Position numbers and translations under genes: made by a program. A model generated the notes under the pieces. That model worked only from the letters and a program-made list of their open reading frames with translations. It was not told where the DNA came from and did no database searches. A stretch of 64,000 nucleotides of DNA, from contig NC_088855.1 of NCBI RefSeq assembly GCF_963853765.1, positions 4,588,001-4,652,000 on the forward strand. The letters run 5' to 3'. Within the stretch, counting starts at the first letter, position 1; each line of letters begins with the position of its first letter. Positions 28,130-60,010 of the stretch are shown piece by piece. The DNA is from Magallana gigas. Its lineage: Eukaryota.

Positions 28130-30561
28130 ATGAACGATTCGGTAATTTCATCGGTATCAAAACTGATTCTTTCCTCAGATGAAGTCATTCAGAATTATTT
28201 GACCAACTACTCTATCAAACTGCCAAACGTATTTTTTCTAGCTCTTACTTTCTGTGTGAGTTTTGTGTATTTATGGCGGAAACAATTATTGAATTATCCT
28301 CCGGGACCAATATCGCTGCCATTCATTGGAAATTTGGACTTCTTTAAATCTAAATCACATATACGAATAGCAAATTTAAAAGAAATTTATGGAGATATAT
28401 TCAGTTTGAAAGCAGGTAAATGGGATGTGGTAGTTGTGTGTTCAAAAGAAGGAATCACTGAGGGACTGACAGATCCTGAGAATAACTTTGATGGCAGACC
28501 AGATTTTTTAGCATTCCATAAATTGTTCATGGGAAATAGACAATTAGGTAGGTCAATCATTAGCTGCAGATCTATAGCTCTGGGAGAAACTTTGGTTTGA
28601 CAGAGCATAGAATACTACCAATAATAAAGGTTAATCAGTTGAAACCTAGTGCAAATTTTTTCTATACTGTGAATTGCAAGTTTTTTTTTAATGCAAGACA
28701 CTGTAGCTCTATGGTCTGTTAACCTGAATTTTTAGGTAGAACTACAGATTAATTAATTAATGTTACTCATGCATATCAATATTTTCTTCGTCGTGCGTAT
28801 TATCAAATATTTATATAAATTCCAGGCATTTCAACAGCTGACCTTGATCTGAAAACACAAGTGAAGAAGGAATATATAATACAAAGTCTGATCAGCCATT
28901 GGAATCCTGAGCCGGGGCAAGGCCAGTTATCATATTCAATAGAAAAGTTGATAGTGAAGGAGATCCTCAGTTTAATGTGTTTCTTTATCAATGAAGAAGG
29001 TGCTTTTGATCCCGCAGAGTGCTTTAAATTTGCTCATCTACATATCATGATGTCATTACTTTTTGAGGATGCATATGATGTAGATGATCCCATTACACAT
29101 GAAATATATGATTGTTTAGAAAACAGGAAAGATGCCATGAATGTTCAACTTTATAATTATTTTCCAATTTTGAAAACCATCTTTAAGCAAAAGATAAGCC
29201 AACTTGAGGAGAGGAATGCCCTACTGACCAGATACCACCGAATTCTATTGAACCAGCACAAGGATACTTACAATCCCACTGAATTACGGGACTTGGTTGA
29301 TCAGCTCCTGATTTTTATTGAGACAGGAAATGATCGTGAGTTATTTGACTCCGATGACATGGACAGCCTCATTCTAGAGTTAGCAGGGTGTGGCTTCTCC
29401 TCAGTTCCCGCTCTGTTGACCTGGCTGATGGGATATATGGCAGTTTTTCCCGACATTCAAACAAAAATGCAGGAAGAGATGGACCAAGTTGTTGGCAGGG
29501 ATAGATTTCCAACCTTAGCAGATCAACCCTTCCTTCCCTACACAATGGCTGTGATATTTGAAGTTCAAAGAAATGTTACCTTATTTCCATTTCTGCATCC
29601 TCACAGAGCGATAAAAAACTGTGAATTTTTAGGTATTACTGTGGAATCATTAATTTTTGTGGTGGCTCAATTTTTGTGGAATTCGTGGGTACCTCTCGTC
29701 CACGAATTGACATTATCCAGGAATTACTAAATTAGAATTATTAAGTCATATTTCCTTTTTAGATATAAAACACAAAATTACGTCCCCACGAACATGTCAA
29801 ATTTAGACAATCCATGAAAATTGGCCCCCACAAATTTAAATGATTCCACAGTATATCAATTAATATTTAAATTTTAAATACACTGGATGTATTAATTTTT
29901 TTTTAGTTAGATATATTTATACATTGTACACCTCTTTTTGCATTAAACATGTTATAATTAAGCCTTTTTCAGATTCATGGCAGCCTTTTTCATTAAAATG
30001 ATTAAAAAAATTTCCTGTATTTTTCATTAATAGGTTATAACATCCCAAAGAACACTGTCATGCTGTTTAGTGTTTGGAGTCTTCACCATGACAAGAAACT
30101 CTGGAAAAATCCATCAAAGTTTGACCCATGCAGGTAATAAACATGGTTTCATTATTTATTACTTGTACAACATTTTGCACCCGTAAAACTGTATTGTCGA
30201 CCCTTCAGAAATCAAGGAAAATTGAGTCTCAAAGTGCTGACAAATAATACTTTGTGTACATGTTCCCTGATTCTTTTATATTGGTTTAAGGGCTTTTTGT
30301 AAATATTTGTCCATTTTTGTCAGGTTTCTAGATTCCTGTGGTAGATTGACCATCCCTGAGCACTTTATCCCCTTTGGCCTGGGGGAGAGACGGTGCCCGG
30401 GGGAGGCACTGGTCGATATGGAGGTGTACCTGTTCTTTACACACATCATGCATCAGCTCAATGTCCGGGCAGAGGGAACTATCCTGAATCTGGAGTCGGA
30501 CTACAGACTGGCCATCCAGCCCAAACCTTTCAAGATTAGGATCAGTAGTAGGGAAGATTGA
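28130..30561 (+). CDS. Cytochrome P450, clan 2 (CYP1/CYP17-like layout), 4 exons, 520 aa; the only complete copy
   Basis: Exons 28130-28547, 28826-29632, 30034-30133 and 30324-30561 join in frame. Membrane anchor, PPGP hinge, EVQR (ExxR), FDPCRF (PERF-like) and heme motif FGLGERRCPG are present. Confidence 0.92.
29639..29851. mobile_element. Tc1/mariner-type MITE (TA TSD) just after the P450 exon 2 donor
   Basis: ta|ctgtggaatcatt ... aatgattccacag|ta; same family as 58454-58671 in the opposite orientation. Confidence 0.9.
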
Positions 30562-32195
30562 AGCATATGTCATAGGCAGTAGTTGTAGCTACATTTAAAA
30601 TAAAATGGGTTAAGATATTTAAGAATCTATTTTAGTAAAAACTCTCACCAGAAAAATAGTGAAAGGAATGTGCCTTGTTAACGTTTAACCCATCTACTGG
30701 CAATGCTTGAGATCAAAGTTATGTTAATGTTGTAATCGTGTCTTGTATTTTGTTTCATTTACTTGTGGACATCAGTTTGTCATAGATTTTGTGAAATCCA
30801 CATTTCAAGAATAGATGTATTCATCATGTTCATGAGCAATGGCTCTCCCAATACAATTTTTTGTCGTGTTTCTTACTTTGATGGAAATCAAATTTTGTTG
30901 ATTGCTTAAATCATGTATGTTGTACATGAAAAAAGATTCATACTGGTAATTCAGAGCATTATCAGTGAGCTTTGAAAATATCAAGTCACTGGTTCAAAAC
31001 CAGTTGTGGCCACTTGATGTTGCATGGTTTATTTTTGGACAAGGTCCATCAAGGGGTAGTCACGGACTCTTACTGACCCAGCACGTCAGACACAGGGTTA
31101 CAGATCTGACCATTTGTACCTCATGGCTTGGAAAGGATTAAATTAATTGAAGACACCACTACTGGTTTTATTTAGAAGTTACATGTAGCTACTATTGAAG
31201 ATGTACTTAGGATTTAGTCAAACATTTTACAGAAATTGTACTGTGTATCATGGATGTTCATCAACCAATCATAGGATTTTTCTTAACCTGTAATAAATTT
31301 TATATAGAGAATCAATTGCCTGATGTGTGTTTGAAATGTAAGGCTCAGGGGCTCCAGCAATTAAGTGCAATAGGCTGAGGGATGTCTTTCCGTCCAAAAC
31401 TTTAAGAATTAACAAAGGAAAAATAATGAGAGAGAATATAAGATGTTCCCATACTGGTATATTGTTGACCGCATCATTAACGGTAATACATGTATTTTGA
31501 TACATAGTGAACTATTTAATTAATCAGTTAACCAAAGACATATCAAAACTACATGTATTTTGATGTTTTGTTGTCCGTATTTCATAAAGATTTTGTGATA
31601 GCTGAATTTATTGAAGTTTGACTGTGATAGCTGTAATATATAAATACAGGAGTATTACAAACTGGAGTATACTCATGTTGAAGTGTTATCATAGATCTTT
31701 TGATATACGTATGATGGTAGATGTTTATATACAATGATCTCCAATCTGATTAAAATTAGAATTGAGTCTAATTGTAATTAGATTGCAATGACCTTATAAA
31801 GGTTTGAGTTTATATGTCTATGGAAAATATGTTTGTGAGTTGTGTAGATATAGTTACCCCCAAGATACGGTCATTTATCGACACAATAACTTCTAGTCAT
31901 TTTTTTCTGTTTACACTACAGTCATTTTTGAGTTTATATATGAACATGAAATATGTTTTAATTTGTGTATATGTAGTTATCCCCGAGATACGGTAAATTT
32001 TTGACATAGTAACTTCTAGTCATTTTTCTGTTTACACTACAGTCATTTTTAAAAATGATTTATTTGTATTGGTTTAGTAACACAAATTGTAATTGTTGAA
32101 TAAAGTGTTTAATAAATATAACAAAATCTACGTGTAAAGCTTTAATATGGTTATCTTTGTGAAAACTGAGAATGAAGCACGAATAGTATCTAATT

Positions 32196-32230
<35 letters not shown>

Positions 32231-59492: not shown

Positions 59493-59707
59493 AACTGCCC
59501 AATTATTGAAAACTGGCAATTATTGAAAACTAGCACCAAATTTTTGTATACTGTGAATTGCAAGTTTTTTGTATGAAAGACACTGTAGTCCTATGGTCTG
59601 TTAACCAGAAGTTTTAGGTAGAACTACAGATAAATTAATTAATGTTACTCATGCATATCACAATTTTTTTGGTGCTGATTATCAAATATTTAATATATAA
59701 TTTTCAG

Positions 59708-60010
59708 GCATTTCAACAGCTGACCTTGATCTGAAAACAGAAGTGAAAAAGGATTATATAATACAAAGTCTGATCAGCCATTGGAATCCTGAACAAGGGC
59801 AAGGCCAATTATCATACTCAATAGAAAAGTTGATAGTGAAGGAGATCCTCAGTTTAATGTGCTTCTTTATCAATGAAGAAGGTGCTTTTGATCCCGCAGA
59901 GTGCTTTAAATTTACTCATCTACATCTACTCATCATGAAGTCATTGCTTTTTGAGGATGCATACGATGTAGATGATCCCATTACACATGAAATATGTGAT
60001 TGTTTAGAAA
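59708..60010 (+). pseudogene. Cytochrome P450 copy 4 (first ~300 bp of exon 2 only)
   Basis: GISTADLDLKTEVKKDYIIQSL...HEICDCLE, then similarity ends abruptly at tgtttagaaa|tctctg. Confidence 0.9.

What the first reader, a model, noticed from the sequence alone, without database searches (positions are those of the whole stretch)
28500..60010. Three-gene tandem array with a MULE transposon at every unit junction
Seen: each junction is [channel 5' region]-[MULE]-[P450]. At 38323 the right TIR tip (ggcgttcggagatgcc) abuts cagatgttttagcattcc, which matches the middle of P450 exon 1 at ~28500 (cagattttttagcattcc). No 9-bp TSD flanks any of the three MULEs. Established: end-specific alternative transposition of DNA transposons can create tandem direct duplications with an element end exactly at the breakpoint and without a normal TSD pair. 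Inference: the MULE right end inserted into P450 exon 1 and duplicated ~7 kb of host genes, and unequal crossing-over then amplified the unit.
Basis: partly seen in the sequence, partly recalled or inferred. Interest (0 to 1): 0.72.

Follow-up and report, generated by a model that had tools for sequence, protein, structure and literature searches.

The report
Oyster gene array joined by transposons
In the Pacific oyster genome a 7.3-kb block (a beheaded P450 gene plus an ion-channel gene) is repeated four times, with the same Mutator-like transposon at all three joints and none outside. This is a natural, old example of a transposon-associated tandem gene duplication, a process known from maize and flies but not yet described for this transposon type in a mollusc.

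Summary
The window is Magallana (Crassostrea) gigas, contig C3. A 7.3-kb host block A starts inside P450 exon 1 at 28499 and ends about 240 bp upstream of a minus-strand Cys-loop-type channel gene. It occurs four times, not three: the fourth copy runs past the window end and is broken by two insertions. A 2.5-2.8 kb FLYWCH-MULE sits at each of the three internal joints and at neither flank (A-M-A-M-A-M-A). Copies differ by 4-8%, and contigs of two other runs bridge joint 38323, so the array is real and old.

At least 34 other family copies end GGTGTG...ATCAGCC and have 8-bp, not 9-bp, target duplications. The array copies have no duplication, lack the left six bases, and carry a right tip variant found nowhere else. 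The right tip is flush with host DNA at all three joints, but joints 2 and 3 abut intron 1, about 112 bp beyond joint 1. Unit 2 keeps a composite joint with 2-bp microhomologies.

A transposase-made right end most likely seeded one complex duplication, finished by break repair and then amplified by unequal crossing-over. Clean two-ended alternative transposition is not shown. The N gap lies in an intron, with collinear flanks. This is a new member of a known kind, of moderate interest.

The parts
28130..30579 (+). Unit-1 cytochrome P450, the only complete copy. It has four exons: about 28130-28590, 28819-29635, 30036-30239 and 30322-30579. The array starts inside exon 1 at 28499.
   Evidence: Pfam PF00067 on the exon ORFs. 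tblastn with a Tegillarca P450 covers residues 14-469. The conserved GRPDF codons span 28499 without an indel.
28499..35792 (+). Host block A1 (7294 bp): the P450 from mid exon 1, the intergenic DNA and the whole channel gene with about 240 bp of its upstream DNA.
   Evidence: Self-BLAST. The four-copy comparison gives a star-like tree with 4-5% substitutions.
33024..35640 (-). Cys-loop-family (pentameric) channel-like gene of unit 1. An intron holds a 36-bp minisatellite at 34305-34782. The 5' exon starts near 35551.
   Evidence: A weak Pfam Neur_chan_LBD hit (E 0.017). The exon peptides are conserved in all four units. An RNA contig is spliced 35264 to 35551.
35793..38323 (+). MULE copy M1: FLYWCH plus MULE transposase, frameshifted. 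It has a deletion of about 140 bp at 37912/37923. The left end lacks the family's terminal GGTGTG. The right tip is the ...GGAGATGCC variant.
38324..45515 (+). Host block A2. Its P450 lacks the first 370 nt or so of exon 1 and has an 857-bp internal deletion (unit-1 positions 29391-30248). Its end is composite: block end to 45133, then 96 bp of the array's right flank (45134-45229), then a 297-bp re-copy of the block end (45228-45515).
   Evidence: Contigs of run X1 show both composite joints.
45516..48276 (+). MULE copy M2. The MULE domain scores 50 bits in ORF 46626-47654.
48277..56659 (+). Host block A3. It starts in P450 intron 1 (about unit-1 position 28611) after an 18-nt local doubling. 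Exon 2 carries an internal deletion of about 155 bp. The N gap at 49170-49303 lies in intron 2. There is a 97-bp local tandem repeat at 56331-56525.
56660..59492 (+). MULE copy M3. It carries a 222-bp MITE insertion at 58452-58674.
59493..60010 (+). Start of host block A4, with the same joint form as A3. It is cut at 60010 and resumes beyond the window at window-equivalents 65491-65969 and 75698-82441. It ends at the block end, followed directly by unique flank R with no MULE.
60011..64000 (+). Foreign segment replacing about 1 kb of the A4 P450. Positions 60009-64322 are a 98% inverted copy of C3:4894705-4898986.

Best explanation
This is a real, old, four-copy tandem segmental duplication on contig C3 of Magallana gigas. 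I propose that one complex founding event joined the region just past the channel gene to the middle of P450 exon 1, through a Mutator-like element.

The right end of the MULE was a transposase-made end: either a one-ended strand transfer or a cleaved tip. It became joined flush to exon 1 at 28499. The other joints were made by microhomology-mediated end joining or template switching. Those joints are right flank R96 to block position 35499, and block end 35795 to the MULE seven bases in from its left tip. The result was a tandem duplication with a composite insertion at its breakpoint, the form still kept in unit 2.

Later events:
1. Unequal crossing-over between blocks raised the copy number to four within a short time.
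2. The 394-bp direct repeat of the composite joint collapsed in units 1 and 3.
3. A second event flush with the tip removed about 112 bp of host DNA next to the MULE. This made the form of joints 2 and 3, which was then copied once more.
4. The three P450 copies, which lacked their 5' ends from birth, decayed. All four units keep the channel exons.

Shown: the anatomy, the ages, and the reality of the joints. Inferred: the role of transposase and the order of events.
For: - Architecture is A-M-A-M-A-M-A, with no MULE at either flank.
- The family termini and 8-bp target duplications are defined from about 25 other copies. At least 34 copies carry the consensus right tip. The array copies have no duplication, lack six left-terminal bases, and carry a tip variant present only at these three places in the genome.
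- The right tip is kept to the last base at all three joints, although the adjoining host DNA differs by about 112 bp between joint 1 and joints 2/3. Two separate events therefore end at the same nucleotide.
- Microhomology is TA at R96|35499 and TT at 35795|MULE.
- The five copies of the block end, including both copies in unit 2, are all 5-8% apart. The composite joint is therefore as old as the array.
- The four blocks form a star-like tree with 4-5% substitutions. M1-M3 form a clade with a stem of 0.003 inside a star-like burst of the family, so transposase was probably active at the time.
- Contigs of runs X1 and X2 bridge joint 38323 with 0 and 1 differences. X1 also shows the composite joints of unit 2.
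- The codons spanning 28499 in unit 1 (GRPDF, conserved in a distant bivalve P450) show no footprint.
- Maize work shows tandem duplications with transposon-containing composite insertions whose internal joints have 0-3 bp microhomology (PMC4270019; PMC3744419).
Against: - No reciprocal product, ancestral haplotype or intermediate was available, so the action of transposase is inferred only from flush tips.
- The right tip differs from every other copy by three bases, so it may not have been a usable end, or may itself be a repair product.
- If the composite joint is ancestral, it must have collapsed twice independently, in units 1 and 3.
- A source for the MULE (a nearby copy or an excised molecule) is not identified.
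- The unit tree is unrooted and star-like, so the order of events is not resolved.
Confidence: 0.45

Rival explanations
1. Classical two-ended alternative transposition, as the reader proposed (sister-chromatid or hybrid-element type). A MULE sat canonically between the block end and flank R. Its right end on one chromatid inserted into exon 1 of the sister. This gave A-M-A with the donor flanks rejoined. The truncated left end, the changed tip, the clean empty site and the composite joint of unit 2 all arose later.
For: - The single-element version predicts the transposon only between copies, a flush right tip and no target duplication, as seen.
- The process is documented for Ac/Ds and P elements.
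- The empty site GAATCGATTTCCAGG is compatible with a precise rejoin across an 8-bp duplication.
Against: - The left terminus lacks six bases in all three copies, and the joint shows 2-bp microhomology.
- Neither empty site shows a footprint or doubled 8-mer: not the array's right end, nor the copy inside unit 2.
- The composite joint is as old as the array.
- The published maize signature is not met: a transposon heading every unit, the first one with a target duplication.
- Several extra ad hoc events are needed.
Confidence: 0.25
2. A transposase-independent origin. Replicative template switching (FoSTeS/MMBIR) or end joining produced a complex tandem duplication that happened to copy or capture a MULE at its breakpoint.
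For: - Joints have 0-2 bp microhomology.
- There is a 297-bp templated re-copy from 394 bp upstream.
- The left MULE end is truncated.
- There is no target duplication and no footprint.
Against: - Copying would have to stop exactly at the MULE's last base.
- A later 112-bp deletion also ends exactly there. Such a coincidence is unlikely unless the template was an excised element, which again implies transposase.
Confidence: 0.2
3. Unequal homologous recombination between two MULEs that originally flanked a single block (M-A-M to M-A-M-A-M), with later loss of the outer copies.
For: The three MULEs form one clade, and unequal crossing-over clearly acted later in this array.
Against: - There is no MULE at either flank.
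- Exon 1 of unit 1 reads through 28499 with conserved codons and no footprint.
- The right flank is a clean empty site.
- The recombinant would have kept canonical termini, which the array copies lack.
Confidence: 0.05
4. An assembly artefact: stacked haplotypes or a mis-join, possibly at the N gap.
For: There is an N gap inside unit 3, and a tandem array is a classic place for mis-assembly.
Against: - Units differ by 4-8% and by many private indels, insertions and decay events.
- Joint 38323 and the composite joints of unit 2 appear in contigs of other runs.
- The gap flanks are collinear within one intron.
Confidence: 0.03

Closest known systems
Maize Ac/Ds tandem direct duplications with composite insertions (reversed-ends transposition with re-replication; PMC3744419, PMC4270019)
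   Same: - A cut-and-paste transposon sits at the duplication breakpoint.
- One terminus is flush with the new joint.
- There is no matching target duplication.
- Extra flanking DNA lies beside the transposon.
- The internal joint has 0-3 bp microhomology.
   Different: - The maize case needs two nearby hAT termini in reversed orientation. It gives a transposon heading every unit, the first one with a target duplication.
- Here a single MULE (a different superfamily, in an animal) lies only between units. One of its ends is truncated and the flank is a clean empty site.
Drosophila P-element hybrid element insertion / single-element sister-chromatid transposition (from my own knowledge and the introduction of PMC3744419)
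   Same: It uses the two ends of one element on sister chromatids. It yields a flanking duplication next to a retained element, without a target-duplication pair.
   Different: It predicts an intact retained end and a donor-site footprint. Neither is seen here.
FoSTeS/MMBIR complex tandem duplications (named in PMC4270019; otherwise from my own knowledge)
   Same: Short microhomologies and templated insertions copied from nearby sequence at the breakpoint.
   Different: This mechanism does not predict breakpoints that fall twice on the exact last base of a transposon.
Animal FLYWCH-type Mutator-like elements (Muta1, Phantom, Spectre, MULE-Cg; PMC6446971, PMC5225508)
   Same: A MULE DDE domain, a FLYWCH finger, long TIRs and an 8-bp target duplication in ordinary family copies.
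   Different: The three array copies are immobile relics with damaged ends and frameshifted coding sequence.

Membership tests
Mutator-like element (MULE) superfamily | Transposase with the MULE DDE domain | tested here: met
   PF10551 scores 50-51 bits (cut-off 27.6) in the M2 and M3 ORFs. M1 gives a partial hit. A FLYWCH finger scores 35.6 bits.
Mutator-like element (MULE) superfamily | Long terminal inverted repeats | tested here: met
   The ends are inverted over about 90-100 nt at 78-80% identity, with a core of 44-48 nt at 91%.
Mutator-like element (MULE) superfamily | Target site duplication of 8-11 bp | tested here: met
   About 20 other family copies have 8-bp duplications outside GGTGTG...ATCAGCC. 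The three array copies have none.
Tandem direct duplication by reversed-ends alternative transposition (maize model) | A transposon terminus lies exactly at the duplication breakpoint | tested here: met
   The right tip ...ATGCC is flush at 38323, 48276 and 59492. The tip differs from the consensus by three bases.
Tandem direct duplication by reversed-ends alternative transposition (maize model) | One transposon per unit, the first flanked by its original target duplication | tested here: not met
   There are three MULEs for four blocks, none at either flank, and no duplication anywhere.
Tandem direct duplication by reversed-ends alternative transposition (maize model) | The target duplication is shared with a reciprocal deletion product | not testable with these tools
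   The reciprocal chromatid is lost in an old natural event.
Single-element sister-chromatid / hybrid-element insertion | The retained element keeps its intact original end and flank, and the donor flanks are rejoined with a footprint | tested here: inconclusive
   The left end lacks six bases, with a TT microhomology. The empty sites show no doubled 8-mer. Later erosion and a precise rejoin cannot be excluded.
Tandem duplication with composite insertion (transposition-coupled re-replication) | The transposon plus a stretch of its flanking DNA is inserted at the breakpoint, with an internal joint of 0-3 bp microhomology | tested here: met
   Unit 2 reads R96 | 35499-35795 | MULE, with a TA microhomology. 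It is as old as the array.
Non-allelic homologous recombination between flanking repeats | Repeat copies at both outer ends of the array | tested here: not met
   Unique sequence lies on both sides. Exon 1 is continuous across 28499.

The most novel reading that the evidence does not exclude
A single MULE end, acting alone (one-ended or abortive transposition coupled to replication or repair), seeded and then reshaped a tandem gene array in an animal. If the same signature recurs at other copies of this family, MULE ends would be a so far unrecognised driver of the very large tandem gene expansions typical of oyster genomes.
Probability: 0.3. Interest if true: 0.65.

Novelty: new member of a known kind. 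Interest (0 to 1): 0.45.

Why it matters
Tandem gene arrays are a hallmark of bivalve genomes, and how they start is rarely visible. This locus still shows its founding joint, and a transposon end lies exactly at the breakpoint. The composite joint resembles those produced experimentally by maize Ac/Ds.

If transposase was involved, this extends transposon-driven tandem duplication to the Mutator superfamily and to a mollusc. It also gives a concrete sequence signature that can be searched genome-wide: the flank to the right of the tip repeated upstream, no target duplication, and the transposon only between copies.

There is a practical point too. Three of the four P450 copies are beheaded pseudogenes, yet one is annotated as a 288-aa "cytochrome P450 1A4".

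Tried and rejected
- **Assembly artefact:** rejected. The units differ by 4-8%, and independent contigs bridge joint 1 and the composite joints.
- **Recombination between two flanking MULEs:** rejected. There is no outer copy, no footprint in exon 1, and the termini are not canonical.
- **MULE inserted after the duplication:** rejected. All three copies share the same damaged ends, have no target duplication, and form one clade.
- **Composite joint of unit 2 as a recent repair copied from unit 4:** not supported. Its two copies of the block end are as far from each other and from unit 4 as any two units are.
- **Right tip read as a truncated end plus a 4-base filler:** less likely, because the last three bases equal the family tip. 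It is not excluded.
- **State of the locus in other oysters:** contigs at 78% identity show exon 1 and exon 2 contiguous. They do not reach the block end. Contigs at 92.5% identity stop at position 28641. Neither set settles the ancestral state.
- **Genome-wide test for the same signature at the other 34 or more tips:** could not be run.
- **RNA across joint 1:** no contig bridged it, so read-out transcription from the MULE into the beheaded P450 is not shown.
- **Earlier notes of this scan on MULEs:** no similar case.
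Full report
**Identity and reality of the array**

The window is G000:C3:4588001-4652000 of a 564-Mb, 34% GC animal genome. A P450 search returned a Magallana gigas protein on a contig of exactly the length of C3, so this is the Pacific oyster.

Self-BLAST shows a direct tandem array from 28499 to 60010. I fetched 40 kb beyond the window. The array continues there: the fourth host block resumes at window-equivalents 65491-65969 and 75698-82441 after two insertions.

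The structure is therefore A1 (28499-35792), M1 (35793-38323), A2 (38324-45515), M2 (45516-48276), A3 (48277-56659), M3 (56660-59492), A4 (59493 to 82441). Unique sequence lies on both sides and there is no MULE at either flank.

The four blocks differ by 4-5% in substitutions, and by more when indels are counted. Informative sites are split evenly among the three possible groupings, which gives a star-like tree.

Logan contigs of two runs from different studies and organism labels bridge 38323 with 0 and 1 differences. One run also contains the unusual joints of unit 2. The array is real and old, not an assembly artefact.

**The N gap (49170-49303)**

The 40 bases to its left align to the unit-1 exon-2 donor and the start of intron 2. 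They skip a 214-bp TA-flanked MITE that only unit 1 carries. The right side starts at unit-1 position 29941.

The flanks are collinear, lie in one intron, and only about 60 unit-1-equivalent bases are unaccounted for. The gap touches no joint and no coding frame. I did not fill it. It does leave the copy number dependent on the scaffold join.

**Genes**

Unit 1 has a complete four-exon P450. The other three copies were born without their 5' ends and have since decayed:
- Unit 2 lacks 370 nt of exon 1 and has an 857-bp deletion.
- Unit 3 lacks exon 1 and about 155 bp of exon 2.
- Unit 4 lost about 1 kb to a foreign segment.

NCBI's 288-aa "cytochrome P450 1A4" is modelled on unit 3.

The second gene lies on the minus strand and is a Cys-loop-family channel-like gene. 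The support is a weak Pfam ligand-binding-domain hit and exon peptides kept in all four units. A spliced RNA contig places its 5' exon from 35551, about 240 bp from the MULE.

**The transposon**

The ORFs carry a FLYWCH finger and the MULE domain at 50 bits. The genome holds well over 100 matches to the element. About 25 other copies define the termini GGTGTGTTCTCCGAAC...GTTCGGAGAATCAGCC, TIRs of about 90-100 nt, and 8-bp target duplications. At least 34 copies carry the exact consensus right tip. It is therefore a MULE in the sense of PMC6446971.

The array copies differ from the rest of the family:
- They have no target duplication.
- The left six bases are missing.
- The host/MULE joint shares TT with the empty site.
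- The right tip reads ...GGAGATGCC, a form found only at these three places in the genome.

M1-M3 form a weak clade with a very short stem, inside a star-like burst of the family. The element was probably mobile when the array formed.

**Joints**

At joint 1 (38323) the tip is flush with exon 1 at 28499. That 120-bp stretch is as diverged from unit 1 as the rest of the block, so it is not a recent conversion.

At joints 2 and 3 the same tip is flush with intron 1, about 112 bp further on, after an 18-nt local doubling. Two different events therefore end on the same last base of the MULE. The shared form of joints 2 and 3 shows that a whole unit was copied later.

The end of unit 2 is composite. 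The block end runs 96 bp into the array's right flank R. It then jumps back across a TA microhomology to block position 35499, repeats 297 bp, and only then meets the MULE. All five copies of that 297-bp stretch are 5-8% apart, so the composite joint dates to the birth of the array. Units 1 and 3 can be derived from it by collapse of the 394-bp direct repeat.

The array's right end and the empty site inside unit 2 both read GAATCGATTTC(C/G)AGG, with no doubled 8-mer. The exon-1 codons spanning 28499 (GRPDF, conserved in Tegillarca) show no footprint.

**Interpretation**

Recombination between two flanking MULEs and late insertion of the MULE are both excluded by the architecture and the shared damaged ends.

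It does not fit the truncated left end, the microhomologies, the clean empty sites or the composite joint. The published maize signature also fails: there, a transposon heads every unit and the first one has a target duplication (PMC3744419).

The closest documented structure is the maize tandem duplication with a composite insertion, where a transposon end plus flanking DNA sits at the breakpoint and the internal joint shows 0-3 bp microhomology (PMC4270019).

My best reading (0.45) is one complex founding event. A transposase-made right MULE end was joined flush to exon 1, and the remaining joints were closed by microhomology-mediated repair or template switching. Unequal crossing-over, a second tip-flush deletion and pseudogene decay followed.

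The main rivals are:
- Clean sister-chromatid alternative transposition with later erosion (0.25).
- A transposase-independent template-switch event (0.2).

**Limits**

No ancestral or intermediate haplotype was reachable. The contigs of other species that I found do not cover the block end. The genome-wide scan for the same signature could not be run. I found no paper describing this locus.

Noticed in passing
window 29638-29851 and 58452-58674: A MITE of about 214-222 bp with ends CTGTGGA...TCCACAG, flanked by TA. It sits in intron 2 of the unit-1 P450 only. An inverted copy (83% identity) is inserted in MULE copy M3. Both are private to one unit, so both arrived after the array formed.
   Followed up: partly
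window 34305-34782, 43285-44144, 54145-55532: A 36-bp minisatellite inside the channel gene, apparently in an intron. It varies from about 13 to 24 to 39 repeats between units and gives long open frames on both strands.
   Followed up: no
window 60009-64000 (extends to window-equivalent 64322): The segment that cuts the fourth P450 copy is a 98% inverted copy of C3:4894705-4898986, about 245 kb away. A second, 91-95% copy lies at C3:4901196-4904367. It contains a dispersed repeat of about 880 bp with dozens of copies. It is younger than the array.
   Followed up: partly
window 48641-49935: The public 288-aa model named cytochrome P450 1A4 sits on the beheaded, internally deleted unit-3 copy and splices across the N gap. 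It lacks the N-terminal third and the ExxR region.
   Followed up: partly
L042-L044 (Logan contigs of three runs): P450 contigs 92.5% identical to unit 1, and 89-90% to the other units, start at or just after unit-1 position 28641. That is where joints 2/3 and unit 1 begin to differ, which suggests a branch point and hence several copies in that sample too. They lack the unit-1 MITE.
   Followed up: no
window 56331-56525: A 97-bp local tandem duplication (99% identity) just upstream of the channel gene in unit 3. It is much younger than the array.
   Followed up: no
window 15039-15499: Two direct copies of about 197 bp, 265 bp apart and 91% identical, upstream of the array.
   Followed up: no
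L017 (C3:57182666-57184844) and other family copies: Non-autonomous copies of the MULE family carry variable numbers (2 to about 12) of a 33-bp subterminal tandem repeat just inside the left TIR.
   Followed up: no
window 35020-35551, minus strand: An RNA contig with a mean word depth of about 181 in an oyster metatranscriptome shows that the channel gene is transcribed and spliced (intron 35265-35550). Its 5' exon lies close to the MULE.
   Followed up: partly
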